From: Macrostomum lignano
Taxonomy: Eukaryota
Length of the DNA stretch: 64,000 nucleotides
Direction: 5' to 3'
Assembly: GCA_002269645.1 (NCBI GenBank)
Contig: NIVC01000900.1
Location: 400,117 to 464,116 of the forward strand
Of this stretch, positions 7,003 to 55,110 are shown in pieces. Positions within the stretch are counted from its first letter, which is position 1. Each line of letters starts with the position of its first letter. The notes below the pieces were generated by a model, which worked only from the letters and a program-made list of their open reading frames with translations, was not told the DNA's origin and did not search any database. A program made the translations under genes and the position numbers.

Positions 7003-7614
<612 letters not shown>

Positions 7615-8030
7615 GCACTCGAGACTCGGTAGATTAAATGGAGCAGTCCTTTGAAGTGAAGCGCTCATAGATTCTATTTTGCAGAAGAGCGTAGAAGCAC
7701 TGATAATTTGTGGCTGTAACAAAATTTTGGCTGCTTCTGGTGTAACGCGCCCAGAGCTTCAACTTTTATACACGTTCATGCATGTGTTTAAATCTGTGCA
7801 CGCATCTGCGCTAGCTCGTAAAAGTAGATATAAGTTACAGCAATGGGAGCCTCAGTCTTTTGGTAACACATCTGCCGTGTCTGCACACTTGTGCACTGCA
7901 GCACTTCACGGGCAGTCACATGTTTTACACTTACTGTAATATAAGGAAGTCGAAAAGCAGGTTGCCTGTTTGCCTGTTGCCTGTTATTGCAAATGGAGGA
8001 CAGATGATTGATGTGCTCTTGTTGGCTGCT
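7615..8030 (-). pseudogene. 5' fragment (upstream region plus first 18 codons) of a third IFIT-like paralog
   Basis: 7668-7615 encodes MSASLQRTAPFNLPSLEC versus MNASLQRTAPFNLPSLEC at 22675. Upstream motifs taaaagttgaagctctgg and atcagtgcttcta match 22575-22660. The frame then runs straight into the TATC array. Confidence 0.85.
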
Positions 8031-8084: not shown

Positions 8085-10752
8085 ATCGGTTCGGTCTCAG
8101 GAGGCACCACCAACGGGGGATCGGCCTGGATCCTCCTCCGCAAAGAAGACGGCATTATCATCCGCAGAGGGCATGCGGCAGCAGGCCGATGGTGCAATTC
8201 CTACGGGATAGCGACGTTTGCCTGCGGGACGTTTGCCAGCCGACGTTTGCCTGCGGGACGTTTGCCAGCCGACATTTGCCAGCCGACGTTTGCCAGCCGA
8301 CGTTTGCCAGCGGGACGTTTGCCAGCCGAAGTTTGCCTGCCGGGCGTTTGCCTGCCGGATGTTTGCCAGCCGACGTTTGCCTGCGGGACGTTTGCCAGCC
8401 GACATTTGCCAGCCGACGTTTGCCAGCCGACGTTTGCCAGCGGGACGTTTGCCAGCCGAAGTTTGCCTGCCGGGCGTTTGCCTGCCGGATGTTTGCCAGC
8501 CGACGTTTGCCTGCGGGACGTTTGCCAGCCGACATTTGCCAGCCGACGTTTGCCAGCCGACGTTTGCCAGTGGGACGTTTGCCAGCCGAAGTTTGCCTGC
8601 CGGACGTTTGCCTGCCGGACGTTTGCCAGCGGGACATTTGCCAGCCGACGTTTGCCTGCCGGACGTTTGCCAGCCGACGTTTGCCAGCCGACGTTTGCCA
8701 GCCGACGTTTGCCTGCCGGAAGTTTGCCAGCCAAAATTTGCTAGCCAATATAAAGCCAGTCAGTGAAAAATTTGATACTGAAACATTCGCAGTTTAGCGG
8801 TTTGACAAAAACCGTTTTTACTCCAACTTTTTGACGGTTATTCGCATGTATACAAGTTTGAAAGCAAAATATATAAATTATGCAGTTCATCAGTCTAACG
8901 TCTAATATCTAGTTTAACAACGATTTTGGCACAACATATCAAAAGATGAACATTGGGTTTGCCTCGTATGAAAGCAATAACAATTGTTGTGCTGAAAAGA
9001 TGAAAACTTCCTATCTCCCTATGGCCTTCAAAACATTTTTCATAGATTTCGAGTGCTGCGTACTTCTTCTTTAGTAGTCCTTGGCATGACTAAGCTTTGC
9101 ATACGTAGTGTCTAGCGCTTGCTATTCTACTAGCTTGCTACTGGCGGCTTGTCTGGCTATTCAGCTATATAGCTTACTATAAAAACGTACCGCATTCGAC
9201 TCGTCTACACATGTACGTTGAGATCGCGGTTTCCTTGCTTACTTGAGTAGTAATACAACAGAATTGGAATCAATTTGCTTACTTTTGGATCTCCCAATGA
9301 ACTGAGAAATATATGAGCCAGAATTACCGCTCAGCAGCTCTTTTTGTTTGCCTCATAACTTAATCGCTGGAGATTCCCGTTGTAATCTGCGCGTCTTCTT
9401 TCGCACATCAAAAATCAAACATCTCAAACTGGGAAAAACGATACGCAATTGTCAAAAGTAAACAATATTTTCACATTCAAAGAAAATCGTTGTTAAACTG
9501 GATATTAGATGTAAATCTATATAAATTGCATAACTTATATAGATTTTGCATAAATTTCATAATTTATAGATTTTGCTTTCAAACTTGTATATATGCGAAT
9601 AACCGTCAAAAAGTTAGAGTAAAAACGGTTTTTGTCAAACCGCTAAACTGCGAATGTTTCAGTATCAAATTTTTCACTGACTGGCTTTATATTGGCTAGC
9701 AAATTTTGGCTGGCAAACTTCCGGCAGGCAAACGTCGGCTGGCAAACGTCGGCTGGCAAACGTCGGCTGGCAAACGTCCGGCAGGCAAACGTCGGCTGGC
9801 AAATGTCGGCTGGCAAACGTCCGGCAGGCAAACGTCGGCTGGCAAATGTCGGCTGGCAAACGTCCGACTGACAAACGTCCCGCTGGCAAATGTCGGCTGG
9901 CAAATGTCGGCTGGCAAACGTCGGCTGGCAAACGTCGGCTGGCAAACGTCCCGCAGGCAAACGTCGGCTGGCAAACGTCGGCTGGCAAATGTCGGCTGGC
10001 AAACGTCCCGCAGGCAAACGTCGGCTGGCAAACGTCCCGCAGGCAAACGTCGTAGACCCATTCCTACGAGGCCGAGCTTAATGCCATCACTCTCGCGCTC
10101 CAGGACATCATCGATTCCGCTACCGCCTGCGCCGCCATCCTCACGGACAGTCAAAGTGCCATTACCGCCATCCAAGCCGACCGGCCCACACTGAACGCGA
10201 GGCTCGAACTAGCGAAGGCCCTCCTCGTGACTGCGGCCCATAGGACCAAACTTACGCTGCTCTGGGTGCCCGGACATTCGGGGGTGCACGGCAATGAACT
10301 CGTAGACACAGAAGCTAAACTCTCTGTCAAGGTCAGGTGCTCATCTCGCTCCCCCGCCTCCAAGGAGCGGATCTACCATCACCTTAGGTATCAGCCCGAC
10401 CTGCCAGGACACCTGGAGGTATACCGCACCCCGGTGTCCCCAGGAACGGGCACTCGTCGGCAGCGGACGCTTATATCCCAAGTCAGATCCGGCCATTGTC
10501 CAGAATCATCCTACTATCGTCACCGAACAGGCATCGCCGAAGGAGGGCCATGCCGGCTATGCAATCAACCGACTGAGCAGTTCCATATTCTCCATTGTCC
10601 TAAGCTCGAACCTACTAGACGCACCATCGGCGTCACTAGCATTGGTGACCTTGCACGAGGAGAAGTAGTGGCGCAGCTCCTGGGGGCCATCGACTGGCGG
10701 CCCCTCTGAGCTCATCTCCGCAAACAACAACAACAAAAGCAACAACAACAAG
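8085..10752 (+). mobile_element. 5'-truncated non-LTR retrotransposon 3' end (RNase H domain, (CAA)n tail), split by a foldback insertion
   Basis: Removing 8205-10059 and one TSD gives GSVSGGTTNGGSAW...GRWCNSYEAELNAI...ILTDSQSAI...LWVPGHSGVHGNELVDTEAK. Stop at 10709 is followed by caacaacaa repeats. Confidence 0.88.
8205..10059. mobile_element. Foldback-type non-autonomous DNA transposon with long inverted arms built from 14/15-bp subrepeats
   Basis: Arms about 8205-8890 and 9530-10059 are reverse complements (gacgtttgccagcc arrays plus a unique inner segment). Termini gggatagcgacg...cgtcgtagaccc. TSD attcctac at 8197-8204 and 10060-10067. Confidence 0.92.
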
Positions 10753-12408: not shown

Positions 12409-15406
12409 CTAGTCAGTAGCCTCACCAGCTTGGACTCTAGTGGCCTCACCAGCTTGTACTCTAGTGGCCTCACCAGCTTGGACTCCAGTGGCCTCACTAG
12501 CTTGTACTCCAGTGGCCTCGCCAGCTTGTACTCCAGTGGCCTCACTAGCTTGTACTCCAGTGGCCTCACTAACTTGTACTCCAGTGGCCTCGCCAGCTTG
12601 TACTCCAGTGGCCTCGCCAGCTTGTACTACAGTGGCCTCGCCAGCTTGTACTCCAGTGGCCTCGCCAGCTTGTACTCCAGTGGCCTCGCCAGCTTGTACT
12701 CCAGTGGCCTCGCCAGCTTGTACTACAGTGGCCTCGCCAGCTTGTACTCCAGTGGCCTCGCCAGCTTGGTCTCCAGTAGCTTCACCAGCTTGTACTACAG
12801 TGGCCTCACTAGCTTGGACTCCAGAAGCATCACCAGATTGTGCTCCAGTAGCCTCACCAGCTCGAACTCCATTGGAGAAAACGGCCCACGTCTCCTCAGC
12901 GAACTCCGCTGCCAGGTGCGCCACATCGTACGCCGTCTTTCGGCACTCTCCGCCTCCCGACCAATCAGATTCGAGCTGCTGATTGAGCTCTTTCACCAGG
13001 ATCTCAGTCGAGTGCTTCTCGTTGTTAACCAGGTAGACCCAGCGGACAATCCAGCTGTCCTCACTTGACAGAATTCTGTGCTCACGACTCACCATGAAGT
13101 TATATATGTCTCTGGTGTCTCTCGATTGGTGAAAGTTGTGATCAATTCGCTTCAATTCTTCTAGCAGGCATTTTTTCACGTTTTTAAGCGATGCAGCATC
13201 TTTGTTTTCTTTGAGCAGCTTCATCTGCGACTCGAGCTCGAATGCCTTCCGCTCTGTCTCGGAACTAAGCTGGTTGAACTGCCTTTTATAGTCGCCTCCA
13301 AGCTGCTTCTTCAACTGGCCAAACGCGTGAGGATATGAGAACTCTCGACCCGATCCCTTAAGCCGAACTGCCAGCGACCGATCGAGGACTTCCTTCGCCT
13401 CCTTCAGCACCGATACGATCATGTTGTTCATTTCTTGAACTTCTCTACCAGTCTCCTTCATCTGCAGCTTCGTCATGAGAAATCGATTCGATCTCATGAG
13501 GTTTCCGCGATCGCCGGCGCCTTCAGCTGACCGAGTCGAGCCCGCTTTGCTCGTTAGCAGATTGAGCTCCAAGAACTCAGCGATTCTGAGCTTTACAGAC
13601 TTCCTTAAATCGTCCAAATCCGATTCAGTTTCAATAACGAAGCTGTTGGAATCATCTATAGTGAGTTCGATCTTGGCGCACAGCTCGTACAACTCTCGGC
13701 GGAAGAACAGCGAGTCTTTTCCAGCTTGAGCTGATGGTGACGCATCCGCCATCACCCTTTCGGCAGTTTTCTGTTCGGACTTTCGACGCTCAAGAATGTC
13801 GAAAATTCGAGGAGCCGCATCGCGACATCCGCACTCGAGACACTCCTGAAAATGTTTTAGATCAGCCTCGGGATTCTCTAGAAGTGACTGAGCCAGCAGT
13901 TTGTTTTTACTTTCATGCTCATCTGGAAGCTTCCTAAAACAGTCTGCCGCTGCATCGAACTTTCTATTCTTCATTAGAAAGCGACCAAGGTGCTCCAGAG
14001 CGAACTCATTACCTTCATCTCGTTCTAATGCGGTTCTGTAAAGCGATTCGATGTCCAGCTTCTTCTTAAATGTGCCAAACAGAGAAGCAAACCACGCCAG
14101 GTACTCTTCTCTGCCTTCTTGTAAACGGAAAAGATCCTCAAAGAAGGCCTGTTTCTTTGCGTAAAACACCATTTCTAAACTGGACTGGGCCTCTACAGCA
14201 GCGATGCACGACTCTATAGCTTCGTCCGTATCACCCTGCTTCATCAAATACAAAGCCTTGCTAAACAGAATAACTGCCACATCTTTGTTATACATTGAAA
14301 ATATCTGACGAAGTGAGTCGAAGTGAGCTACAGATTTATCTTTGCCTAAACTTTCGCTCTGCAGTTCCAGAAGTTTCAGCTCGATCCAAAGATTACCAGG
14401 TGCAGCTGCGACTTCTTGGCCTTTTTTTAGCAGTTGCATTGCTACATCTGTACTCCCGATTTCGCAGGCTGCACCCGCCATCTCCAAGTAAAATCCGGAG
14501 TCGCTTATTGAAAAGTCTGAACTTTTTACATCGTCCAGTAGAGCCTTTCTTTGCTGGTCAAAGCTTTTTTTGTTCGCCAGTTTAGATGCCGAAATATTTT
14601 TGCGCACACAACGTACATGAAAAACGAATGCTCTTTGAAGCTCTTCGGGCTTTGCAGAAACATGTCGGTAGCTTTTTCAACCAGCTGGCAACACAATTTG
14701 TGGTTTACATTGTGAAGAATTGCTTCTGCATAGTTGGCATAAAAAATGGAGGTTGTGAGATTCTTCTTCTCCCCAATCTCTCTGGCGGTGCGCCACAGCT
14801 CCAACAATTCACTGTCGGCCTGCTTTTTTGCCGTCTGCCTGTTGCACCGAGCCTTTAAAAATGCCTCACCATAAAGCCAATAGAAATTTTCTGGCTGTAT
14901 TTCTTTGGCCCTGGAAAAAGCCTCAACACCAATAGCATACTTTTTGGGTCCGAAACAGCCAAATGTGACACCTTTGACTCCGAAGACTTGAGCTCGTTTG
15001 TTAATGTCATTCCACAGACTGCTGAGCTTACGAAGTTCCTGTGCAAGTGAGTCCTCTTCACGCTTCTGGAACTTTTTACTTGTATTTCCGCGCATCTTTT
15101 TGAGGTGCAATACGTCAGCTCTGATAACATACTCGCTGGATACGTGCAGGTCAGTCTGATTGTCTGACTGAATTTGAGCATCAATGCGTCGCGCCTCATC
15201 CAAGAGTTCTTGCGCTCTGACGAAATCCACGCGCATATTTGGGTATGTAGGTATGCCAGCGTAGTGAGGTAGGCGACCTTCTTGTGAGGCTCTCTTTTAA
15301 TCTTTCGTTCTGTGGTCTTGATCACGTCTTCGATGTTGACTTTTGTACTTTCCTCGTCAGGACGCCAAGTAAAGTGACACTCCAGCTGGTCCAAGGTCTC
15401 AACCAT
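12409..15406 (-). pseudogene. IFIT-like TPR protein paralog 1, intronless, about 999 aa if two 1-nt frameshifts are corrected (pseudogene or sequence errors)
   Basis: Starts MVETLDQLECHFTW (vertebrate IFIT N-terminus is LxQLxCHFTW). Then AYLTTLAYL, QELLDEA, FGPKKYAIGVEAFSRAKEIQPEN. Three ORF pieces (14855-15406, 14526-15236, 12409-14607) are colinear with the intact paralog at 22675. Length 2998 + 2 nt gives 1000 codons. Confidence 0.8.
12420..12865 (-). repeat. 24-bp coding tandem repeat encoding (QAGEATGV)n at the C-terminus of paralog 1
   Basis: Plus-strand unit cttgtactccagtggcctcgccag, about 18 copies, in frame up to the stop at 12409. Confidence 0.93.
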
Positions 15407-16089
15407 CGTAGCAGCGGACCCTGTGAAACTTTTGGGTACAAAATTTGCTTTCAGTCGTCTAAGTAAGTTAAAGAAATGTTTTTTTATTGTCCTGTATTGA
15501 AATATATGTTAGATTAATATTATCACTGAAAACATGCCAAATACCGAAGGCGCACTTAATCGCAAACCTACGAGCGTAGTACGAGGAGAGTTAGCACTAC
15601 TTGCAATGCGAGTGTCTCGCTTCTCTTTACTCCAAAGCCTTTCTCTAACTGCGTCTTTTAAGCAAAAAAGATGAAGAATACGAGCTAGTTGAACACTTAT
15701 GGGGCAGATAGTGCGCACAAAATGCATCTTAAAAGCTGTGTCGGTTTTACAGTGCTGCCCTATGCATTGTTTGAGTTCAATTTGTTGTGTACTCTCTGCT
15801 TGCTTATGTGGTTCAGAGCAATTTTAGTGTTTGTGTACATAAATTTACAGGGACTGTTACAGTGACAGGCGACAGCAAGCGCAAACACTTCAACCGCATA
15901 CAATATTAATCATTGTTTTCTAAGAGCTGATCTAAAGTACATGTTCTCAGAATCAAAGCACGCAGGAAAGCTTGCTTTCGCCTGTTCTGTGCGTTCTGCG
16001 CGTCCATGCCTGATAAGGCTCAAGACTTCGTTGAGCATCCCTCGATGCGCGTAGAGTGTGCATATGTCGTCGTAGACCTGAACACTGTC

Positions 16090-16290
16090 CTGCGTAGGTT
16101 TGAGCGGTCTCTGTTCGAGACGCCACATAAGAACGGAAACTTCCTGGAGGACTTCTCATGGACCTCTCCAGACTCTCCTGAAGAGGCAGGACATGGTGTC
16201 GGTCAACACCCGTTTTCGCAAGCCATCGGGAGGACTTTCAACCTATGTGTGCTGCAAGCGAGGACGGCAAGAATGCGCGTGGCCGAAAAG
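16090..16290 (+). mobile_element. Decayed LINE AP-endonuclease fragment (RTE-like)
   Basis: KNGNFLEDF, then after a frameshift LLKRQDMVSVNTRFRKPSGGLSTY; this matches the N.NG..L / NT.F.K pattern of RTE endonucleases. Confidence 0.6.
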
Positions 16291-16849
16291 CAACACAGAG
16301 GCAAACAGAACTCAAACATGTGCTTGTGCGCTTTTGGGAGCGCCGCCGCGCCGTTAACTGCCGGTCCATCACACCACTGACTCCTCGTCTCCTCGGAGGC
16401 CTCAAATTCAATAACTCTATAGAAATATACTGTATAATAGCAGCCGGCAATAACATAGCTCTCAATAATCAAATACCAAAGACTTTGACTAAGGCTTACC
16501 GATCGATATAAGCTTCTCTCAGAGATTTAGCCTCTCGGTTCATGTTAGTTTGTCTCGAGTTCTCTTGAGGCTGCTTCGAGGCTGCTACGAGTCTGGATTT
16601 CAGCTCAGATTTTTCGCTTATATTTATACCCGTTTTGAGTCGACCTTGAGCTCAAACCGGTTTTTTGATGAGTTTACGAAAGGAATTGATTTGACAGATG
16701 AGATTTTCGAAAAGAAGCAGTGAAACTTAGGTCAATTTAAGGTTAACGTTTACATTATTTGCGAGTTCTAAAATTAAATGTTGCGAACCGGTTTTTCTTA
16801 TAATGAAATCGTAATTCACTGTTTTCGTGATAATACTAACGCATGCAAG

Positions 16850-19800
16850 GTGGGTTCAGCACGCCTGTGTAGCATGAGACAGACCAGGCCTACGAGCTAA
16901 GGTCTGCGATCCTACACACCTGCACCCCCTCTATTCTGGTGCAGGAATATGTACGGAGCTGAAAAACCTGTTTATCTACATGGAGGACGAGCGACCCCAG
17001 ACACACCGACACCGTGCCTGGATTTCGGCTCGCAGCTGCATCACCAAGGCCGACGAGCTGCGTCACCTGCTAGTGGCTACCAACCCGGAGCTACCGGCAA
17101 ACGGTGTCGTAGTTCACAAGACCATCTCCAAGCCGGGCGGAGATGGTTTCACGGCTATTCTTGGACTGTCGGATAGCTGGATGCTCTGCTATCCGGACAT
17201 GTCCCTCATCTCTGTCGGGCTGATGCAGATTCAGCTCTTTAGCTTTGAGTCTGACGCCACCCGTCCACCGCCCCCAGAGAAGCGTAAGCGGGCGAGCGGG
17301 CACCGCCCGCGGAGAAGCGTAAGCGAGCGAGCGGGGGCTCTGCCGGGCGGAAACGCCCAGGAAAAGAAGCTCCCGGTCGTCACGACCCCTCCGAGGACGT
17401 GGACCCTGTCAGAGGGAAAGCCGCGAAAGCTGCAGCAACAGGCGGACGTGGAAAGGGCCGGAAACCCACCCGGAACACTATCCGCTCTGGTCTGACTCAG
17501 CGCGCGAAGCAGCTGCTGGACACCGCCAGGGCCCACAACCGCAGCAACCCCCAGCCCAATGTCACCACTGCGGCCCCCCAGAAAACCGGGCTGAGAGCGA
17601 GAATGCCGCCCAGGTGGAGGCATCGCCCTCGACCATGGAGACCATCCGGGAGGAGCCCATGGAACTGGAGCCTGGAGCTATCGGCGAGGCAGAAGAGGTG
17701 GCTCTCCTGCACAACTCGCCCTGAGCCGGCAGGAAGCTGCGCGGACCACTCGTGGATTCCCCGGAGTGGACATCCTGCAGCTAAACCTACACCACTGCAT
17801 CGCGGCCTCGACCAACCTGATGCGGGTGGCAAACTTTGCGAAACCGGGCATCATCCTACTCCAGGAGCCCTGGACAAAGAAAGGTAAGATTCTGAATATT
17901 CCTGCTGGTTTTGACTGTTTTCAAGACCACCAAAACCCCAGAGCAGCCATGTTCGTGTCTACCCATCTCAAAGCTTGGCACAGACCGGACCTCTCTGACA
18001 GAGATCTCTGTGTGATTCAATTCAACCATATTATCACCAACCGCACGGTCATCATCGCCTCGATCTATATCCCTGGCGATGGCCCCGCGGTTCCACCCAA
18101 CCTCATCTCCCTCGTGGACTACTGCTCTAACTGTAGGTTCGAGCTGCTGGTGGCGGGCGACGTCAACGCTCACCATACCCACTGGGGCAATAATACTTCC
18201 AACAGCAGAGGCGAGGAACTCCTTGCTTACATCTGCACCACCAATACTGAGTTTTGCAACATTGGTGGAACCCCCACCTTTGACAACGGGCGATGGACGG
18301 AGGCCCTCGACGTTACCCTCGTCTCCCATGGCTTGACTCCTTTAGTCAAGGACTGGGAGGTTTGGGACGAATAGGAATCTCTGTCTGACCATCGCTTCGT
18401 TCGTTTCCGATTGCAATCCTCTTGCCCCAAGCCTCACATCCTGTGGAAAAGGAACGTCCGGAACACTGACTGGACGGCTTTCACGGAAACCCTGAAACGC
18501 CAGACAGATCAGCTGTTTACCGCCGCTCCAACCACCTGTCAGGAAGTGGATGACCTTGCAGACTTGCTCAGCAAGACCGTCCTGACAGCCCATGAGGCTT
18601 CCTGTCCTCTTAAAGCCTACAAAGGCACAATATCCGCCCCCTGTTTGCACCCGGCGCTTGGATCCCTCCGGCGCAAGGTAAAGTACTTCCAACCGTAAGC
18701 TCGCAAGAGCAAGGACCCAGCTGACCTGGCCGCCTACCAAGAAGCGATCCGCGACTTTAAGCGTGAAACCAGGAAAGCCAAGTCCGACAAATGGGCCAAT
18801 ACTGCGCGGAGTTAGAAGGCACCCGTCCTACTTCGCGCGTAGTTAAGGCTCTCACTCTTGACAAAATGTAAAAGCTCTCAGTTATTAAAAGACCGGACGG
18901 CCGGCTCGCTGAGAACCCTGGGGAATCGCTGGACATCATGCTCACCAGCTCTTTCCCACGTGCCGCACAGCAGCTAGGCCCACCGGACCACTCTCCGGGC
19001 GGACAGATCCTGGCTTCGACCATCATTACTAGAGAGAGGACGGCTCGCGCCGCAAAATACTTCTCTCCTTTCAAGTCACCAGGATCTGACAACATTTATC
19101 CTGCCTTCCTCCATGAGGCAGTTATAAATGACAGGTTTCTCGGCCTCCTCTGCAACCTCTTCAAGGCCAGCATTACCCTCGGGTACGTGCCAAAAGCCTG
19201 GCAAGAGGCTACGGTAGTCTTCACACCCAAGCCAGGGAAGGGAGACTGATGGAACGGCTGGTGCTCTGGCGCCTTCTCCTCGTAGAGCTGAGGAACTCCC
19301 CGCTCTCCCTAACCAGCACGCCTTTCGTTCTGGACGCTCCATCGAAAGTGCGCTGCACGCCATTGTCGACAAGCTGGAGCGCGCCGTGCTTGGCAATGGA
19401 TACGCGCTCTCGCTTTTCCTCGACATTGATGATGCTTTCAATAATGTGCTCTTTGAAGTCTTTAAGCGGGCCCTGGAATCCCGGGGCACGCACGAGCACC
19501 TCACTCGCTGGATCATGTACATGGTCTCCCATCGTACTGCCACCTCGCGCCTCCTGGGACACTCGCGCTCCGTGGAAGTCCAGAAAGGCGACCGCAAGTC
19601 CTAAGCCCGAAGCCCGATCCTCTCCTAAGCCCGATCCTCTGGAATATAGTCATGGACGAGCTGCTTTGCAGCCCGCATCCGACCCAGTTTTAGAAGGTCG
19701 GCTATGCGGATGATGTTACCGCCACTGTGGCTGGACCATCACCCGCGTCCTCAGGGACTCCTTCAAGCTTCATCCACCGTCGCGAACGCTGGGCACACAG

Positions 19801-20695
19801 CTGCGGTCTCAGTTCTCTGAGTCTAAAACCGTGGCTATCATGTTCACCAGCCGCCGAAACTGGAGGATCGAACCGCTCTCCCTCTATGGCAAACCTGTTG
19901 CCATGGAGAAACAAACCAGATGTCTGGGCGTCACCCTCGACCACAGGCTGAGCTGGACCCCGCACGTCCAAACCAAAGCCCACAAAGCCCTCGCGACTCT
20001 CGCGCAGATCCGCAGAGCTTTCGGCGCTACCTGGGGCCTCACCCCCCGCCGCCTCTGGTGGATTTACACTGCCATTGTTAGACCGGCCATCTCCTTCGCC
20101 GGCTTCATTTGGAACAGTGCCATAGAAATGAAAGGGGTTCTTTAGGTTCTAAATAGGGTGCAAGGCCGCGCTTGTCGAGCTATCATGAGCGCGGCTCCCT
20201 CTGCGCCCTTCGCTGGCATGAACTCCTTGGACATTCCCCCCTCTACCTCTTTGTTGGGTGTCCAAATCCAGAAGCAGTTTGCCTTCAGAAAGCGGAATTT
20301 CCGGCCGCATGGCGACCTCAGCCTGCGAGACCTGGAAGAAGCGAGAGGCATTCCACCACGTCATGAAGCAAGAGACAACTGGAAACCCCATGAAATCCAC
20401 TGCTTCACTGACGGGTCCCAAATCAACTCCGCCTCTGGCTACGGCTACTGCATCGTGTCTGGAGGGAGAACTATGGCGACCTTCTCCCAACACACCGGCA
20501 CCTGCTCCACCACCGTCTTCCAGAACGAAGTTCTCGCCATTAGCTCCTGCGCCATGGAGCTGTACAATCAGCGCGTCTGGGGGAAGGAAATTACCCTCCA
20601 ATCAGACAGCCAAGCGGCGATTCACGCCCTTGAGCGCAGCACCACCTGCTCGCGTACAGTCCTCGACTGTATCGGGCAGCTCAACCGCTTAGGCA
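16850..20695 (+). mobile_element. Degenerate near-full-length LINE with ORF1 remnant and APE-RT-RNase H ORF2 (LOA/R1-group-like), 3'-truncated
   Basis: APE: MDILQLNLHH..LLQEPW..GDVNAHH..LDVTL. RT: SPFKSPGSD, AFRSGRSIESALH, FLDIDDAF, GYADD. RNase H: CFTDGS..FQNEVLAI..SDSQAAI. Many stops and frameshifts. Confidence 0.92.
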
Positions 20696-20705
20696 CAACA
20701 TATCT

Positions 20706-21090
20706 TTTGATATTTTGTGCCTTTCTTATTGTTCTATCGATATTCATAAAGCTTTTTGTTCAGAAAATTAGGATTCCATGTTAATTTTTTATTCTACGTA
20801 TATTTGTGCACGTCTAGTGCCTAAAAAACCATTAAAATGGCACAGCTTGGCTCTTTGCTTTTATGAGTCTATTTCATCATTCTTAGCTGACTGTGTAACA
20901 AATATGCGTAGCAAAAATGATAAAATGGATTCATAGAACCAAAGATTTGGAGCTGTACAATGCATTTTTATTATTTTTAGGTACAGGAAACGTACGTAAA
21001 ATAAATAATTAATATAGAATCCTAATTTTCTGAACGAAAAGCTTTACAAATATCGATAGAGCAATAAGGAAGGCACAACATATCAAAAGA
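20706..21090. mobile_element. About 385-bp imperfect palindrome (MITE-like hairpin) abutting the truncated LINE
   Basis: 20706-20790 is the reverse complement of 21012-21090, and 20800-20885 of 20905-21010; centre is near 20895. Confidence 0.75.
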
Positions 21091-21309
21091 TGAGCATTGG
21101 ATCTGCCTCCTATCAAAAGCAAAAGCAATTTGTGTGCTGAAAAAATGAAAAATTCTGATCTCCGTAGTGTATTTTTCCTGGAAAACCTGCCTTCTAAAAT
21201 TTTCTAAGAAACAATGTTTCCCGTCTTTTCGTCCTTGTTTTGATCGCGTGACATTAAAAATTTTGGTTGTGCAAATTTTTATCTTACTGCTTCTAGTAGT
21301 CTGCTTGCA

Positions 21310-21900
21310 CTGTATTTCGAAGATCTCTACACCGCCACTGTTAACGCGCCACCACCCCGCTGCCAGACAATCCCAACTTCCGCCAGAGACGCCGTTGTCG
21401 GAAGAGGAAAATTAATTTTAGCGTTGCACCAGCCGTGCACTGCCTGCTAGAGCACATCGAGGCTGAAATTTAGTGCGGAGGCAGTCGACGGAGATTCTGC
21501 GTTGCCAGTAGTTTATCTACCTCAGCGGTCTGGTTTCTGGCTTACGCGTGGATCTGTAGCGTCGCCGTGGGCGTGTCTTGGCTGCCTTTCGTTCTGTGAG
21601 GGGAAGCCCTGCAGTCTGAGGCCCTGTCTGACTGCCCTGGCACTGTTTCAAGCAGTGATCGAGACCGTCCTGCTGTACAACGCTGAGACCTGGACGTTGA
21701 CGGACTCACTCGACCAACAAGTAGACGCGGCACAGCTGGTCTGCTGCGCGAAATATTCAAGATCGGCTACGAGCGATGGACCAACGTGGCACTTCTATCT
21801 ATACGCGAGTCTGTAGGCTGTCGTGCGTCGTACGCTCGAGCAGCCTAGTCCCGACGGACACCGCGTTGTACGCGTGTCAGTGGAGGACCGCAGCCAGGGT
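21310..21900 (+). mobile_element. Decayed RTE-like LINE fragments
   Basis: LFQAVIETVLLYNAETWTLTDSLDQQVDAA; homologous to 10770-11200. Confidence 0.7.
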
Positions 21901-22674
21901 CAGTACGCAAACCCGGGTCTGGGAAAGGGGCACGAAAGGACCAAGCCCTTGAGCCCCATCACCAAAATTATTTAAAAATTAGGCGACTTCTTTTCAACTA
22001 AATGTTTCTAGTGAAAGTTTTTAGGAAATGAGGTTTCACTATTCATTTACTCCTTAAGAAATAAAGTCCTTGTGAATAATATTGGAATTTTGAGTCATCG
22101 CAATGGTGCTTTTTGACGTACTTTTACGAGCATATTCTAAACAACGATACTAACAAAGGACAACATTGCCTGTAAAAGATTTGATATCGCTTAAAATTTA
22201 GCTTAAATTTCAGAGAGATAAATGATAAGAAGCGTTACCATTAAAATTAATCTTCAGAGCTTCAGCTACATTTCCAGGAAAATTACAGTGGGAAACGTAC
22301 ACAGAACAGTTGGAAAAATGAGTTAGTGAAGTACAGGTCTGGATAAGAAAGGCTGGCGCCAACAAAAGCTCACTGCACAGTGCGCATCGACTCTCCCAGT
22401 AAATGCAGAAAGAAAGCTGCGAGTGCACAATACACAGACAGTCTGCTCTGCCAGACGAAACACCAACAAGAATGGCCCACCGCCGTTGTTCACTCACATG
22501 TACGAGCGTACGTCTATTTTTAGCTGCAGACGCATAAACAAATTTATCCACTACGTACGTACATTAAAGTTGAGTAAAAGTTAAAGCTCTGGATTCAATT
22601 GCACCAAAAGCAGCAGCGACAGTTTTTGTTCCAGCCGCATCAAATCAGTGATTCTATATAGAATCTAATTTCAC

Positions 22675-25290
22675 ATGAACGCTTCACTTCAAAGGACTGC
22701 TCCATTTAATCTGCCGAGTCTGGAATGCCACTTTCTATGGCAACCAGAGAAGTCGAGCACAAAAACCAACATCGACCAGGTGATTGAACGGTTGCTGGAG
22801 TACAGGCTGTCAGACTCTGAGATGTCAGTTGTCTACCTGACCACCCTTAGCTACCTATCAACTCTGCCACCGTTTCCGAACTTCGCCAAGGCGCAGCAAT
22901 TCCTTGATGAAGCTGAACAAGTGCGCGACACGGACGATTTCTGGCGGCACAGCGGCTTCATCCTGTCCTCCATGCGGCTGTGCATCCGCCAGATTCGGCG
23001 GGGTCGGCCGCTGATGCATCACGATATCGCTGACGAGCTGGCCGAGCTCACCAGCCAATGGGAGGGCAGCGCCGACGTCAGGGCGACCGTTTATGGCATC
23101 AAAGGCGCGTCTCTAAGATTCTTCGGGCCGCTGAAGTACAGAGAAGGAGCTGAGGCCTATGGCTTGGCCTTGGAGCTGCAGCCAGACAACTTCAGATGGC
23201 TTTGGGGGAAAGCGTACCTGCTGGCCCGGCAAACTAGACAGGGCAGACCCGGTGAGATCCCCGAGAGTCAGCTGAACTTATGGAGTCGAGCCTACGAGAT
23301 TTCCACCAGGGATGGAATCCGAAACCCGACTTTTTTTGCCAATTTCTCCGAGGCGGCGCTTAGCGACCGAGCTCTGACCGCGTGGTGCGAAAGTTTGATG
23401 GATGAAGCAGTTGGACTGTTGGAACGGCTGGGAAGAGACGAGAAGGCCAAGCACCCGGTAGCCTTTCTTATTGGTATAAAAGTTTACAAAAGGTTTAAAT
23501 CATTTGCAAAGTATTATACGCTTCTTGATTTAGCACAAACAGTCGACCGATGCAAAAGTTCTAGCTTTTATTTGGAGATTTCTAGACTGCATATGAGAAA
23601 TGGCGATAAACAGAAGGCTCTGGAGGCACTCAGAATTGGTAAAAATGCTGCAATGCACCCTGGTAACCACTGGGTCGACCTTGAACTCATTGAGCTGGAA
23701 GCTGAGGATGTTGGAATAGAAAATACGCTCCAATCCTTTGACTCCCTGCTGGCGTCAAACTATCGCGTATATGACCGGGTCATTGCATGCATTCGCTTCA
23801 GAAAGGCGCACTTTTTGTTTAAATGCAACCGGAACCAAGAAGGCTTCGAGGAATGCCTGCTAGCATTCAAGACGTGTCCGGATGCTGTGGAGAACTTTCA
23901 GGACTATCGATATGAGGAAATTCTGCAAGCATTACAAAACTGGCCAGATCATGAAGAATATGAGGCCTGGTTTCGCACTAATATCATGTCCTGCATTCAG
24001 CGCCAAGACAGCATTCACATCGAGGATCAGTTTCACAGAGGGCTGTTGAGAAATCAGCGCAACCATTTCGCCTGGGAGCACCTGGGGAGGTTCTATTTAA
24101 AGGAACACAAGTACCAACTGGCTTTCGACTGTTTCAGTCAGTTACCGGGCGACTCGGACCTGCCAGACGGTACACGTAGAGACAATTTGCTGACTGAAGC
24201 CCTTCTACAGAATCCACAAGCCAGCCTGGAAGACATTGAGCTCTGCTTACAACTTGGTCGTCACAAAGCTGCACTAAGAGTGTTCGACTTCTTAAACGAC
24301 TGCAAAACTGACCTTGTAAAACGGGTGTTGGAAATGGCGAACGGGGGTGACTCGCAAAGGGCCAGGGACTCCAGTCTGATGTTTTTCAGCCGTCGCGTTT
24401 ACGAGCTGTGCGCCCGAGCTCAAAACCTGGCTTATGACTACGTCAGCGATGCGGCTGATCAGTCAAACGTGGCTGACACGGTGCGCAAACGAGTGAGGGA
24501 CCTGCTGGAGCTCGGCTCCCTCAGCACCGCGGCCGCAGCTCCAGCTGCAGCAGGCAGCGATCGCGGCAACTTGATGCGACAGGCGAGGTTCGAAGCAGTC
24601 AAGCTGCACTGCCGAGGCAGAGGGTCCACAGAGGAGTGCTGCAACTCGATCGTGCTCACTCTGAAGGAAGCCAAGGAGCTGCTCGACCGGTCCTTTGCTC
24701 ATCAGTTCCAAAGCGAGACATCCGAAGAGTTCTCCTACATCCACGCTTTCGGCCAGATGAAGCAGAGGTTAAAGTCGGATCCAGAGTACAACCGGGAGCT
24801 GAAGGAGATGCAGTCCAAAGCGGATAAAAAAGCGCTTGAAGCAGAAGCACTGATGAAGGCGATTCGCAGAAATCGAAGTCTGCGAACTGCGGAAAAAATT
24901 CGCGAATTTCTGCACGCCGGAATTAAAAAAATGAGCGCCAACTTTCGCAACGCCAAAGCCACCAGCTGGAAGTTCGACTTCATGGCGAATCGCGAGCGAC
25001 GAATTCTGGAGGAGGAAAACCGCTGGCTCATTCGCTGGATCTACGGAGTGAACATGGAGAAGCACAAGGTAGAACTGCGGGTTGGCGATATCGAGCAGCA
25101 TCTGGCAGCCGACTGGTCCGGCTGGGACGGCTGCCGCACCGCCTACGAGCTGGCGAACTTGGCCGCCGAGTTCGCCGAGGAGACGTGGCTGATTCTGGGG
25201 CCGCAACGGCTGGACGGTGACAGCGGTTCTGCGGGTACCGAATCTGAGGAGAATCACCTTGCCGCAGAGTTTGCGACTCTGCGACTCTAG
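22675..25290 (+). CDS. IFIT-like TPR protein paralog 2 (871 aa, intact, intronless) with a C-terminal putative HEPN-like domain
   Basis: Uninterrupted ORF. LECHFLW, YLTTLSYL, QQFLDEAE and LRFFGPLKYREGAEAYGLALELQPDN..KAYLLAR align by eye with vertebrate IFIT1/5 subdomains. TPR-like AWEHLGRFYLKEHKYQLAFDCF. Conserved with paralog 1 along its whole length. Confidence 0.88.
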   Translation: MNASLQRTAPFNLPSLECHFLWQPEKSSTKTNIDQVIERLLEYRLSDSEMSVVYLTTLSYLSTLPPFPNFAKAQQFLDEAEQVRDTDDFWRHSGFILSSMRLCIRQIRRGRPLMHHDIADELAELTSQWEGSADVRATVYGIKGASLRFFGPLKYREGAEAYGLALELQPDNFRWLWGKAYLLARQTRQGRPGEIPESQLNLWSRAYEISTRDGIRNPTFFANFSEAALSDRALTAWCESLMDEAVGLLERLGRDEKAKHPVAFLIGIKVYKRFKSFAKYYTLLDLAQTVDRCKSSSFYLEISRLHMRNGDKQKALEALRIGKNAAMHPGNHWVDLELIELEAEDVGIENTLQSFDSLLASNYRVYDRVIACIRFRKAHFLFKCNRNQEGFEECLLAFKTCPDAVENFQDYRYEEILQALQNWPDHEEYEAWFRTNIMSCIQRQDSIHIEDQFHRGLLRNQRNHFAWEHLGRFYLKEHKYQLAFDCFSQLPGDSDLPDGTRRDNLLTEALLQNPQASLEDIELCLQLGRHKAALRVFDFLNDCKTDLVKRVLEMANGGDSQRARDSSLMFFSRRVYELCARAQNLAYDYVSDAADQSNVADTVRKRVRDLLELGSLSTAAAAPAAAGSDRGNLMRQARFEAVKLHCRGRGSTEECCNSIVLTLKEAKELLDRSFAHQFQSETSEEFSYIHAFGQMKQRLKSDPEYNRELKEMQSKADKKALEAEALMKAIRRNRSLRTAEKIREFLHAGIKKMSANFRNAKATSWKFDFMANRERRILEEENRWLIRWIYGVNMEKHKVELRVGDIEQHLAADWSGWDGCRTAYELANLAAEFAEETWLILGPQRLDGDSGSAGTESEENHLAAEFATLRL

Positions 25291-25299
25291 CTGCGACTC

Positions 25300-25937
<638 letters not shown>

Positions 25938-26647
25938 TATAGATAGTGATTTTCATTTTTAGTATATTAGAATATTGGATTAATATTTAAGTAATCTTAT
26001 AGCACGTCTAGTACATACTACTTGTCAGTAGAGTCTTTGAAATGGCGTTCTTCTGTTGAATTAGATGTATCTACGCTCGTATTGAGGGAAGCTATACGCA
26101 TGATCAATATTGTGTTGAGATTTTGTAGCTTTCTTTCTCGTGCAATTTTTTAAGTTTAAAGTGCAAAAATTGAAACCAAAATTTATCCTCAATGATTTCC
26201 TTAATCGCTCAGTATACTCGAACTGTGAATTTCTTTATTTTTTGTTTATTTTAATACAATTTACCGCAGCAAACCAGCGATCTCAGACCTACCTGCTTCC
26301 AAAAGACAGTTAGTGGCTGGAGTCAAATCAGCATGAAATATTTAGAGTCAATATTCCTGAAAATGTTTTTGTATGATTTTTAATCTGCAGTAAATTTTGC
26401 TCATTGACAACTTATTAATCTTTGCTGGTGTACGGAGCTCCAGAAATCACGGGAAAAGCATGACACTAAAGCTATTAAACTATGTCAGGAGCGCCAGTTT
26501 TAGTTTGTCAGGAAAGTTACTTTTTCGAGATTTTTTAAAAAGAATGGGTACCATTTTGAGACTGTCAGGAAGCTGTCAAAAGCAGCATTCTGGGCCGATT
26601 TTCTTTTTCTGAGATTTTTTAGGATGCCATTTCGGCGCTGTCAGGGC

Positions 26648-26972
26648 GGGAGTACGACGTTTGCTTGCGGGAAGTTTGCTTCGGCAAGCAAAAGTCCGCA
26701 AGCAAAGTTCGGCAAGCAGACTTCGGCAAGCAAAATTCCGCAAGCAAAATTCCGCAAGCAGACTTCGGCAAGCAAATTTCCGCAAGCAAAATTCCGCAAG
26801 CAGACTTCGGCAAGCAAATTTCCGCAAGCAAAATTCCGCAAGCAGACTTCGGCAAGCAAAATTCCGCAAGCAAAATTCCGCAAGCAGACTTCGGCAAGCA
26901 AATTTCCGCAAGCAAAAGTCCCGCAAGCAAACTTCGGCAAGCAAACTTCTCGCAAGCAAATTTCATAGACAC
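26648..26972. mobile_element. 325-bp MITE of the same foldback family as 8205-10059
   Basis: Ends gggagtacgacgtttgcttgcg and cgcaagcaaatttcatagacac are imperfect inverted repeats. TSD gtcagggc at 26640-26647 and 26973-26980. Body is made of gcaagcaaa subrepeats. Confidence 0.85.
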
Positions 26973-32050: not shown

Positions 32051-42307
<10,257 letters not shown>

Positions 42308-54453: not shown

Positions 54454-55110
54454 CTGCTTTGATAATTGTAACTGCTTTTCTTTACCATGTATATTAAATT
54501 CAGTTTTAGTTTTATTAATATGATATTGTAGTTATGAAAAATGCATAATTAATAATAATAAGTAAAAAATCACAAAATGTGATGAGTAAGCACCTTTAAA
54601 AAGGAAGGAAAAGATGATACATTAATAGCAAAAAGGGTAATTATCATATTAAAAAAATTACAAGATGAATGAATGAATGATAATACCTTAAAAGCATTAA
54701 TTGATAATTAATAACATTAAGTGTAAAGCCTCAAATTATTATTTTACCATGGCATAACAAAACTTGATTATAAATTTGTTGAAAAAGCTTAAAATATTGT
54801 TTGTATTTTTTTTCAAAAACTCAGTTTTCTTTTTGTCATTTCAATATTAATCAAACTTACATTTATTCTTGCACATGTTTTTTGTAAAAAATATACTACC
54901 TACTTGCTAATCGCTATACTAAATAAAATGCTTCAAACTGCTTGTTTTATACAGCTTTAAATTGAAAAAGTTTCATAATTTTTTTACAATAAATAATATG
55001 ACACACAAAAGTTGATAAATTGGAAGTTGCAACTGATTCATTAGCACTTATTAAAAAATCAATAAATAGCAATGAATACTTAACTACAGTATTCAAATAG
55101 AGTACAGAAG

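What the first reader, a model, noticed from the sequence alone, without database searches (positions are those of the whole stretch)
12409..25290. A family of IFIT-like TPR genes in an invertebrate genome
Seen: two long, diverged, intronless paralogs (plus a third fragment) share LECHF(T/L)W, YLTTL(A/S)YL, (L/F)LDEA and FGPxKY...ELQP(D/E)N..AR. Established: vertebrate IFIT1/5 begin LxQLxCHFTW and continue LLKCGGKNY...VDPEN...AYRL; they are interferon-induced sensors of 5'-PPP or cap0 viral RNA and are mainly known from jawed vertebrates. Inference: residues equivalent to IFIT1 K151, Y157 and R187 appear kept in paralog 2 (R, Y, R) and partly in paralog 1 (G, Y, R), suggesting RNA-end recognition in an animal lacking interferon.
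Basis: partly seen in the sequence, partly recalled or inferred. Interest (0 to 1): 0.85.

Follow-up and report, generated by a model that had tools for sequence, protein, structure and literature searches.

The report
Flatworm IFIT homologues with extra domain
Two unannotated genes of the flatworm Macrostomum lignano encode proteins whose first 500 residues are true relatives of the vertebrate antiviral IFIT proteins, joined to a conserved 300-residue domain of unknown fold, so the IFIT scaffold is older than interferon, although its RNA-end-binding residues are mostly not kept.

Summary
The window is Macrostomum lignano (GCA_002269645.1, NIVC01000900.1:400117-464116).

- **Paralog 2** (22675-25290, +) is an intact 871-codon ORF with no gene model in that record.
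- **Paralog 1** (15406-12409, -) is colinear with it at 37% identity. It is broken by two 1-nt deletions in homopolymer runs, and restoring them gives one 999-codon ORF.
- **The third copy** (7615-7768, -) holds only the 5' flank plus 18 codons.

IFIT homology is well supported. A two-sequence profile searched against 1.84 billion proteins found only a small flatworm-type family and then bona fide IFITs. A profile of the first 110 residues hits only IFIT5, IFIT1, IFIT2 and IFIT3 in the PDB. hhalign against IFITs gives 99.7% probability over 426 columns. The four best Foldseek matches of the AF2 model are IFIT5.

The RNA-end inference is weak. R186, K257 and Y156 are kept, R260 partly; K150, Y250, R253, Y254, Q288 and F337 are not.

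Verdict: a new variant of a known kind. Function is untested.

The parts
22675..25290 (+). Paralog 2: intact intronless ORF of 871 aa. It has no gene model in GCA_002269645.1.
   Evidence: ORF list. Family HMMs match NTD 22699-23541, middle TPR 23551-24309 and CTD 24319-25197. The locus L003 gene list shows no called gene here. AF2 model: pLDDT 81.8.
22675..24309 (+). IFIT-homologous TPR module of paralog 2 (aa 1-545), comprising subdomain I with LECHFLW and regions equivalent to IFIT subdomain II, pivot and subdomain III.
   Evidence: hhalign against the IFIT family: 99.74% probability, E 5e-27, p2 residues 5-506 against IFIT5 11-455. The four best Foldseek hits are IFIT5. PDB profile searches.
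24310..25209 (+). C-terminal all-alpha domain (CTD, aa ~546-845). Conserved motifs: LFFSR..YE.CA, R..RL, ALD.C, YPHA, ARREHxII..E.AW..W...N..KH, TAYDVAH.AAEFAE.T.
   Evidence: Alignment A4 with 11 invariant columns. Domain model: pLDDT 79.9, pTM 0.83. No significant match by PDB sequence search, Foldseek PDB, BFVD, Pfam or PADLOC.
12409..15406 (-). Paralog 1: same architecture, read in three frames (15406-15242, 15245-14565, 14565-12412). It becomes one 999-codon ORF once two single bases are restored.
15239..15244 (-). Frame break 1 of paralog 1: a one-base deletion in a C run (..CATACCCAAATATG..). Restoring one C gives YLHTPNMRVDF, which matches paralog 2's ..FPNFAKAQ.. region.
14565..14572 (-). 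Frame break 2 of paralog 1: a one-base deletion in an A run (A7). Restoring one A gives NWRTKKSFDQQRK.
12414..12875 (-). 24-bp x 19.2 in-frame minisatellite ((GEATGVQA)n) extending the C-terminus of paralog 1.
7615..7768 (-). Remnant of a third, paralog-2-like copy: about 100 nt of 5' flank plus 18 codons (MSASLQRTAPFNLPSLEC, coding 7668-7615), joined directly to a microsatellite.
   Evidence: tblastn and blastn; translation.
7004..7614 (-). (TCTA)153 microsatellite, written in gene orientation, abutting the remnant. It is the same repeat that follows paralog 2, which suggests that codons 19-871 of that copy were deleted.
25298..25940 (+). (TCTA)161 microsatellite starting 8 nt after paralog 2's stop codon.

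Best explanation
These are two unannotated members, plus one remnant, of a Macrostomum lignano multigene family of intronless genes encoding proteins of about 870 aa.

Shown:
- Residues 1 to about 500 are homologous, end to end, to the whole vertebrate IFIT protein. This covers subdomain I with the CHFxW signature, subdomain II, the pivot region and subdomain III.
- Residues ~546-845 form a separate, conserved all-alpha domain that vertebrate IFITs lack and that has no detectable relative.
- The family evolves by local duplication, decay of copies and gene conversion.

Inferred:
- The IFIT-type TPR clamp still encloses a ligand channel lined by some of the ancestral basic residues (equivalents of R186 and K257, and partly of R260, plus new lysines at the T37 and Q41 positions).
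- It most likely binds single-stranded RNA or another anionic ligand. Its end specificity would differ from IFIT1/IFIT5, because the triphosphate and cap contacts (K150, Y250, R253, Q288) are replaced.
- The C-terminal domain, with its many invariant polar residues, would act as the output: an effector enzyme or an assembly module.
- Together they would make an interferon-independent, single-chain sensor-effector of cell-intrinsic defence.
For: Organism and locus:
- 100% identity over 30,365 bp to M. lignano NIVC01000900.1.
- The neighbouring Slo channel is 99% identical to Mlig030539g2.

Specific IFIT homology:
- A profile of the two window paralogs against 1.84e9 representatives gave 78 hits. 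These were the flatworm-type family, then proteins named IFIT5-like or IFIT1-like in stingray, smelt, frog, hemichordates and echinoderms, all through query residues about 12-200.
- A profile of 19 family N-termini, with no vertebrate sequence included, hits IFIT5 at E 4e-12 in one stretch (7-199 against 13-199), and also IFIT1 and IFIT3.
- A profile of the first ~110 residues alone has only IFIT5, IFIT1, IFIT2 and IFIT3 below E 0.01. The next hit is at 0.033.
- hhalign against an IFIT alignment: 99.74% probability, E 5e-27, 426 columns.
- AF2 model (pLDDT 81.8): Foldseek ranks 1-4 are IFIT5, with TM 0.50-0.57 normalised to IFIT5 over about 540 columns. IFIT1 follows.

Function retained:
- Paralog 2 is an intact 871-codon ORF despite only 33-40% identity to its paralogs.
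- dN/dS is 0.34 in the CTD between paralog 1 and Mlig006963g3.
- The CTD has 11 invariant and 8 nearly invariant columns across 15 sequences.

Immune-like evolution:
- At least 7 annotated loci in M. lignano, plus these copies.
- A remnant copy.
- Mosaic divergence: dS is 0.155 in the 3' third and saturated elsewhere.

Channel residues partly kept:
- R186 equivalent is R/K in 9 of 9 sequences. K257 equivalent is K/R in 9 of 9. R260 equivalent is K/R in 6 of 9.

Possible RNA link:
- Two M. lignano models place an RRM_1 domain in front of a divergent IFIT-like module.
Against: - No functional or expression data. Neither gene has a model in a transcriptome-based annotation. They may therefore be silent, inducible or simply missed.
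- Most residues whose mutation strongly reduces IFIT5 PPP-RNA binding are not conserved (PMC9677429, Table 5). Q288 is usually E, the very substitution that strongly reduces binding in IFIT5.
- At 16-17% identity, helix registers in the alignment may be off by a residue. I could not inspect model coordinates or electrostatics.
- No ISRE, IRF or NF-kB consensus lies within 1 kb upstream.
- The CTD has no recognisable catalytic fold. It could simply be a structural or oligomerisation domain.
- The RRM fusions may be merged gene models; another model in the same family cluster, P0081, is 4,203 aa long and carries a family copy only at residues 975-1902.
- Paralog 1 may be a pseudogene.
Confidence: 0.6

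Rival explanations
1. They are true IFIT homologues but not nucleic-acid end sensors. The TPR module would work as a protein-protein scaffold or adaptor, as proposed for IFIT2/IFIT3-type partners, or it would bind another ligand. The role need not be antiviral.
For: The triphosphate and cap contacts are replaced: K150 to C/F, R253 to a hydrophobic residue, Y250 to V/L, Q288 to E. Ambulacrarian IFIT-like proteins also lack K150, R253 and F337, so the PPP pocket may be a vertebrate innovation. No immune-type promoter motifs were found.
Against: The equivalents of R186 and K257 are conserved in all nine family members examined, with R260 basic in six, and basic residues are gained at the T37 and Q41 positions. 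The family shows duplication, decay and gene conversion typical of conflict genes.
Confidence: 0.3
2. The loci are non-functional: silent, decaying duplicates of a family whose working copies lie elsewhere, for example Mlig006963g3 about 95 kb away.
For: There are no gene models for either copy in a transcript-based annotation. Paralog 1 has two frame breaks and a minisatellite expansion in its 3' end. A third copy is reduced to 18 codons. A retrotransposon sits between the two copies.
Against: Paralog 2 keeps 871 codons open although it is only 33-40% identical to every known paralog. Paralog 1 has no lesion other than two 1-nt homopolymer deletions, the typical residual error of a PacBio assembly. 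CTD dN/dS is 0.34.
Confidence: 0.15
3. It is a generic TPR protein whose likeness to IFIT is chance or convergence, because TPR repeats match each other easily.
For: Pfam sees only weak generic TPR hits. High hhalign probabilities are common between TPR proteins. Foldseek also lists IFT-A, Ctr9, SKI3 and OGT at E 1e-7 to 1e-5.
Against: The match starts in the non-repeat N-terminus (LECHFTW) and is colinear over the whole IFIT length. A profile of the first 110 residues finds only IFITs. In 1.84e9 proteins the non-family hits through the N-terminal region, where a name could be looked up, are IFIT or IFIT-like; the few generic TPR proteins match only through the middle repeats. The other Foldseek TPR hits have TM 0.1-0.3 against 0.5-0.57 for IFIT5.
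Confidence: 0.04
4. It is cargo of a mobile element or a captured viral gene rather than a host gene family.
For: The genes are intronless in a genome averaging about 5 introns per gene. They are multi-copy and lie next to retroelements, both here and on an ENA contig.
Against: No terminal repeats or transposase/RT gene travel with the ORF. The flanks of paralog 1 and Mlig006963g3 share no similarity. The CTD has no BFVD match. The NJ topology roughly follows animal phylogeny.
Confidence: 0.04

Closest known systems
Human IFIT5 (PDB 4HOR, 4HOT, 3ZGQ, 4HOQ) and IFIT1 (5UDI, 5W5I, 6C6K)
   Same: The N-terminal LxxLECHFTW signature and subdomain I. Colinear homology across nearly the whole IFIT length. 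IFIT5 is the best structural match. The equivalents of R186, K257 and Y156 are kept, and R260 partly. The coding sequence lies in a single exon. The genes sit in local clusters with duplication and gene conversion.
   Different: About 16-17% identity. K150/K151, Y250, R253, Y254, Q288 and F337 are not conserved. The long pivot-helix insertion of IFIT5 (about residues 296-317) is absent. An extra conserved C-terminal domain of about 300 aa is present. The host has no interferon system and no ISRE was found upstream. Expression and RNA binding are untested.
RefSeq 'IFIT1-like/IFIT5-like' proteins of hemichordates (Ptychodera, Glandiceps, Saccoglossus) and echinoderms (Amphiura, Antedon), and Strigamia T1JLK3
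   Same: They are invertebrate proteins retrieved by the same N-terminal profile. They also lack K150, R253 and F337. In the NJ tree they lie between vertebrate IFITs and the flatworm family.
   Different: None matched the CTD profile. Most match human IFIT5 directly over nearly its whole length; the flatworm proteins do not. They carry only automatic names. The one paper found that examined such proteins (PMC3688568) rejected the Saccoglossus and Branchiostoma candidates as IFITs.
Macrostomum lignano hypothetical proteins Mlig006963g3 (PAA75149.1) and Mlig030191g2 (PAA92423.1)
   Same: The same family and architecture, also intronless. Mlig006963g3 lies on the same contig about 95 kb away. 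It is 65% identical to paralog 1 overall and 89% in the CTD.
   Different: They are annotated, whereas the window copies are not. Paralog 2 is only 34% identical to any of them, so it is a deep, otherwise unrecorded branch of the family.

Membership tests
[quoted passage not shown] | N-terminal subdomain I with the L..L.CHFTW signature preceding the TPR array | tested here: met
   LECHFLW and LECHFTW lie at residues 16-22. The subdomain-I profile A7 hits only IFIT5 (2.5e-9), IFIT1 (1.7e-6), IFIT2 (5e-4) and IFIT3 (1e-3), all anchored at their N-termini. The next hit is at E 0.033.
[quoted passage not shown] | Colinear similarity over the whole IFIT protein (subdomains I, II, pivot, III) | tested here: met
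   hhalign of A6 against A5: 99.74% probability, E 5e-27, 426 aligned columns, p2 5-506 against IFIT5 11-455.
[quoted passage not shown] | IFIT structures are the nearest solved folds | tested here: met
   Foldseek PDB ranks 1-4 are IFIT5 (E 7.6e-9 to 8.9e-8, TM 0.50-0.57 normalised to IFIT5). IFIT1 follows at about 1e-6. The model has pLDDT 81.8.
[quoted passage not shown] | IFITs are the nearest sequence relatives outside the query's own family | tested here: met
   Exhaustive search of 1.84e9 representatives. Hits named IFIT5-like or IFIT1-like. Local phmmer with the IFIT5 sequence, verified identical to 3ZGQ_A.
[quoted passage not shown] | TPR-only architecture of about 460-490 aa | tested here: not met
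   The proteins are 871 aa, and 999 aa for restored paralog 1, with a conserved non-TPR C-terminal domain of about 300 aa.
[quoted passage not shown] | Induction by interferon or virus (ISRE-driven promoter) | tested here: not met
   No ISRE, IRF or NF-kB consensus within 1 kb upstream of either gene or the remnant. Actual inducibility cannot be tested with these tools. Interferon genes are reported only from jawed vertebrates (PMC3688568).
[quoted passage not shown] | Orthology shown by a rooted phylogeny | tested here: inconclusive
   Only an NJ tree without support values, rooted arbitrarily on human IFIT5, was made. Its grouping is vertebrates, then ambulacrarians, then Strigamia and unknowns, then the flatworm family.
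IFIT1/IFIT5-type sensors of 5'-PPP or cap0 RNA ends | K150 (IFIT5) / K151 (IFIT1) contacting the triphosphate | tested here: not met
It aligns with F149 in paralog 2 and with C in paralog 1 and most of the family (the 'CFGP' motif).
IFIT1/IFIT5-type sensors of 5'-PPP or cap0 RNA ends | R186 (IFIT5) / R187 (IFIT1) | tested here: met
   R185 in paralog 2; R/K in 9 of 9 family members.
IFIT1/IFIT5-type sensors of 5'-PPP or cap0 RNA ends | Subdomain II and pivot contacts Y250, R253, Y254, R260, Q288, F337 | tested here: not met
   The equivalents are V/L, a hydrophobic residue, I/V, K/R (6 of 9), mostly E, and N/H. Only the K257 equivalent (9 of 9) and partly R260 are kept (mutational effects from PMC9677429, Table 5). 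The alignment register is uncertain at 17% identity.
IFIT1/IFIT5-type sensors of 5'-PPP or cap0 RNA ends | Basic tunnel and measured binding of PPP or cap0 RNA | not testable with these tools
There is no biochemistry.

The most novel reading that the evidence does not exclude
The IFIT clamp is a bilaterian invention that predates interferon by hundreds of millions of years. In flatworms it survives as a single-chain immune sensor-effector: an RNA-binding IFIT module fused to a previously unseen enzymatic domain, probably with a new fold, that carries out the antiviral action directly.
Probability: 0.25. Interest if true: 0.85.

Novelty: new variant of a known kind. Interest (0 to 1): 0.62.

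Why it matters
The papers I could search place the origin of IFITs in jawed vertebrates, together with interferon. The one study that looked in invertebrates rejected its candidates (PMC3688568), and no paper found here reports an invertebrate IFIT.

This locus, and the relatives it pulled out in a centipede, echinoderms and hemichordates, show that the IFIT fold with its signature N-terminus existed in protostomes and deuterostomes. The case parallels the recent re-dating of Mx proteins (PMC11789081).

It gives a testable system. M. lignano is a laboratory model with an established transgenesis method (PMC5730564). Two questions become open to experiment:
- What did an IFIT do before interferon existed?
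- What is the attached domain, which has no known relative?

It also flags two sizeable genes missing from the public annotation.

Tried and rejected
- **The search for homologous proteins:** paralog 2 alone and a 21-sequence family alignment both returned nothing. The word pre-filter evidently fails for this family, whereas the exhaustive search worked.
- **Pfam:** only sub-threshold generic TPR hits. A DUF1722 hit on paralog 1 (23.9 bits) was seen in 1 of 15 family members and is treated as spurious.
- **CTD as a HEPN-like or other known all-alpha enzyme.** This was my idea, prompted by the REH...N..KH motifs. No conserved Rx4-6H motif is present. There is no PDB sequence hit, no Foldseek hit below E 0.48 in the PDB or 0.8 in BFVD, and no PADLOC family. 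Rejected for lack of support.
- **Promoter scan** for ISRE, IRF, NF-kB and GAS: nothing meaningful.
- **Taxon of the unnamed ENA relatives:** the contig record (ERZ26859043) gives no organism.
- **Literature:** searches for invertebrate IFITs, for M. lignano with IFIT, and for the Mlig gene identifiers found nothing relevant.
- **Faster evolution of the sensor half:** this reading of the mosaic identity was rejected. Synonymous divergence also differs (0.155 against saturated), which points to gene conversion of the 3' third.
Full report
**1. What is in the sequence**

The ORF list shows an uninterrupted 871-aa ORF at 22675-25290 (+), here called paralog 2. On the minus strand between 15406 and 12409 there are three overlapping ORFs in three frames.

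tblastn of paralog 2 against the window aligns these three pieces colinearly with residues 12-63, 58-272 and 283-841. It also finds an 18-residue match at 7668-7615 (-).

Both frame breaks of paralog 1 are single-base deletions in homopolymers. One is CCC, where CCCC would read YLHTPNMRVDF. The other is A7, where A8 would read NWRTKKSFDQQRK. With those two bases restored the gene is one 999-codon ORF with no other lesion. Its 3' end carries a 24-bp x 19 in-frame minisatellite (12414-12875).

The third copy (7606-7768, minus strand) is 74% identical at the nucleotide level to paralog 2's 5' flank and first codons. After codon 18 (..SLEC) it runs directly into (TCTA)153. The same microsatellite, (TCTA)161, begins 8 nt after paralog 2's stop codon. 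It therefore looks like a paralog-2-type duplicate that lost codons 19-871.

A six-frame scan with family HMMs finds no other copy in the window. A degraded non-LTR retrotransposon lies between the two divergently oriented genes.

**2. Where the window comes from**

The neighbouring Slo/BK channel exon is 99% identical to M. lignano Mlig030539g2. The locus fetched for that protein matches window 21943-52307 at 100.000% over 30,365 bp.

The window is therefore Macrostomum lignano GCA_002269645.1, contig NIVC01000900.1, positions 400117-464116.

The gene list of that record has no gene at paralog 2's position. No protein more than 65% identical to paralog 1, or more than 35% identical to paralog 2, exists among the hits. 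Both genes are therefore unannotated.

The assembly is PacBio/Canu polished with Pilon. The annotation is transcript-based, with about 4.9 introns per gene on average (PMC5730564). Three things follow:
- The homopolymer breaks may be assembly errors.
- The lack of gene models suggests low or no expression in the published RNA-seq data.
- Intronless 2.6-kb coding sequences are unusual for this genome.

**3. Is it IFIT-like?**

Pfam sees only weak generic TPR matches, and phmmer against the PDB sees nothing. Profiles are decisive.

- *Two-paralog profile against the PDB.* It hits IFIT5 at E 1.1e-6, query 7-220 against IFIT5 7-209.
- *The same profile against 1.84 billion representatives.* It returned 78 proteins. 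The strong hits are M. lignano hypothetical proteins and unnamed ENA proteins with the same architecture. The weaker ones, matched through query residues about 12-200, are named IFIT5-like or IFIT1-like. They come from a stingray, a smelt, a frog, three hemichordates and two echinoderms, plus a Strigamia protein.
- *Profile of 19 family N-termini, with no vertebrate sequence.* It hits IFIT5 at 4e-12 in a single stretch (7-199 against 13-199), IFIT1 at 5e-5 and IFIT3 at 9e-4. Designed consensus TPRs match only through one 30-50-residue repeat.
- *Profile of the first ~110 residues only.* It has IFIT5, IFIT1, IFIT2 and IFIT3 as its only hits below E 0.01, all anchored at their N-termini.
- *hhalign of the family's TPR module against an alignment of IFITs.* It gives 99.74% probability, E 5e-27, over 426 columns, with paralog 2 residues 5-506 against IFIT5 11-455. 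The IFIT5 sequence used is identical to 3ZGQ_A.
- *AF2 model of paralog 2.* It was built with a 21-sequence alignment and has pLDDT 81.8 and pTM 0.63. It is entirely alpha-helical.
- *Foldseek of that model against the PDB.* The four best matches are IFIT5 (E 7.6e-9 to 8.9e-8, TM 0.50-0.57 normalised to IFIT5, about 540 columns), followed by IFIT1. Other large TPR proteins appear with TM 0.1-0.3.

Homology to IFITs is well supported.

**4. Is the RNA-end pocket kept?**

I used the hhalign register and the list of IFIT5 mutants with their effect on PPP-RNA binding (PMC9677429, Table 5). Each position was tabulated in nine family members and in eight IFITs or IFIT-likes.

| IFIT5 residue | Equivalent in the flatworm family |
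|---|---|
| R186 | R/K in 9 of 9 (kept) |
| K257 | K/R in 9 of 9 (kept) |
| R260 | K/R in 6 of 9 (partly kept) |
| Y156 | Y in 6 of 9 (its mutation is listed as neutral) |
| Y250 | V/L |
| R253 | hydrophobic |
| Y254 | I/V |
| Q288 | mostly E |
| F337 | N/H |
| E33, T37, Q41 | variable, often K |

The hemichordate IFIT-likes also lack K150, R253 and F337. The vertebrate PPP/cap pocket is therefore not conserved, and may be a vertebrate elaboration. A subset of basic channel residues is conserved.

The register is uncertain at 17% identity. Two alignment methods differ by two to three residues around E33-Q41. I could not inspect coordinates or electrostatics.

**5.

Residues ~546-845 of paralog 2, and the equivalent region of paralog 1, form a conserved domain found only in this family.
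- Fifteen sequences share 11 invariant and 8 nearly invariant columns. The motifs are LFFSR..YE.CA, R..RL, ALD.C, YPHA, ARREHxII..E.AW..W...N..KH and TAYDVAH.AAEFAE.T.
- Modelled alone it is a confident helical domain (pLDDT 79.9, pTM 0.83).
- It has no PDB sequence match, no Foldseek match below E 0.48 in the PDB or 0.8 in BFVD, and no consistent Pfam or PADLOC family.
- One ENA relative carries two such domains in tandem (P0017). None of the proteins matched by human IFIT5 matches the CTD profile.
- The many invariant polar residues suggest an active or binding site. That is an inference only.

**6. Evolution of the family**

M. lignano has at least seven annotated loci of this family: Mlig006963, 030191, 020377, 010163, 019237, 011244 and 000529.

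Mlig006963g3 lies on the same contig about 95 kb from paralog 1 and is also intronless. Against paralog 1, protein identity is 52% in the N-terminal part, 57% in the middle and 89% in the C-terminal domain.
- Synonymous divergence is 0.155 in the C-terminal domain and saturated elsewhere.
- The mosaic therefore reflects gene conversion or recombination of the 3' third, not different constraint.
- dN/dS there is 0.34, which indicates purifying selection.
- The flanks of the two loci share no similarity.

An exploratory NJ tree of the N-terminal region, without support values, groups vertebrate IFITs, then ambulacrarian IFIT-likes, then Strigamia and unnamed sequences, then the flatworm-type family. 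This is compatible with descent from a bilaterian ancestor.

Two M. lignano models place an RRM_1 domain before a divergent IFIT-like module. This may be a real fusion or merged gene models.

**7. What is known**

The only paper found that examined invertebrates concluded that IFITs arose in jawed vertebrates together with interferon, and rejected acorn-worm and lancelet candidates (PMC3688568). No paper in the searchable library reports IFIT homologues in invertebrates, in M. lignano, or under these gene identifiers. RefSeq's automatic names, however, already call several ambulacrarian proteins IFIT-like. A comparable re-dating has been published for Mx (PMC11789081).

**8. Verdict**

- The IFIT interpretation is right as homology.
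- The claim of conserved RNA-end recognition is not supported residue by residue.
- The architecture (IFIT module plus a novel C-terminal domain) is a new variant of a known kind.
- The most likely working model is an interferon-independent IFIT-type clamp that binds an anionic ligand, probably RNA, with altered specificity, coupled to the C-terminal domain as output. That model is inferred, not shown.
- I put homology at about 0.9, and the sensor-effector mechanism at about 0.35.

Noticed in passing
window 22675-25290 and 12409-15406: Neither IFIT-like gene has a gene model in the public M. lignano record GCA_002269645.1. Paralog 2 is an intact 871-codon ORF that is absent from all protein collections searched.
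   Followed up: partly
window 16980-20800 (+): A degraded non-LTR retrotransposon lies between the two paralogs: EEP endonuclease at 17766-18374, RT fragments at about 18938-20145, and RNase H at 20158-20784, with several frame breaks. A further RNase H-like fragment lies at 10227-10709.
   Followed up: partly
window 32006-42307 (+): Slo/BK calcium-activated K+ channel gene (Mlig030539g2, 99% identity) with unusually long exons, one of 695 aa. Its intron holds a 1.7-kb hexanucleotide-type microsatellite (36844-38574, reading 'PTPH') with GC skew of about -0.6.
   Followed up: partly
window 45059-46310 (-): Cys-loop ligand-gated ion channel gene in two exons: the ligand-binding domain at 45714-46310 and the transmembrane region at 45059-45790.
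   Followed up: no
window 52779-55767: Harbinger-like transposon remains: a Myb/SANT-like ORF (52779-53513, +) and a DDE_Tnp_4 transposase ORF (55111-55767, -), in an AT-rich stretch.
   Followed up: no
window 7004-7614, 25298-25940, 33403-34065; 8212-8746, 9694-10052, 26680-26964: Very long (TCTA)n microsatellites of 150-160 units, and 14-nt satellites (CGACGTTTGCCAGC and a related unit), recur around the gene copies. Two of the (TCTA)n arrays sit exactly at the 3' edge of paralog 2 and at the break of the remnant copy.
   Followed up: partly
L002 (NIVC01000900.1:314795-337428) compared with window 12865-15394: Paralog 1 and Mlig006963g3, about 95 kb apart, are 87% identical at the nucleotide level in the 3' 1.25 kb but 64.5% in the 5' 0.7 kb. 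dS is 0.155 there and saturated elsewhere. This indicates gene conversion of the C-terminal-domain region.
   Followed up: yes
proteins P0014 and P0024 (UniRef A0A1I8FW97, A0A1I8FX15; M. lignano): Two gene models carry an RRM_1 RNA-recognition motif (aa 21-91) upstream of a divergent IFIT-like N-terminal module in which ESPFKW replaces ECHFTW. This is either a real RNA-binding fusion or merged neighbouring genes.
   Followed up: no
L001 (ENA ERZ26859043, contig ctg70513) 10001-12643: A full-length 880-aa family member sits as a single ORF on an unnamed 50.7-kb ENA contig next to retroelement genes. Many such ENA and Logan relatives exist, and their source organisms could not be determined here.
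   Followed up: partly
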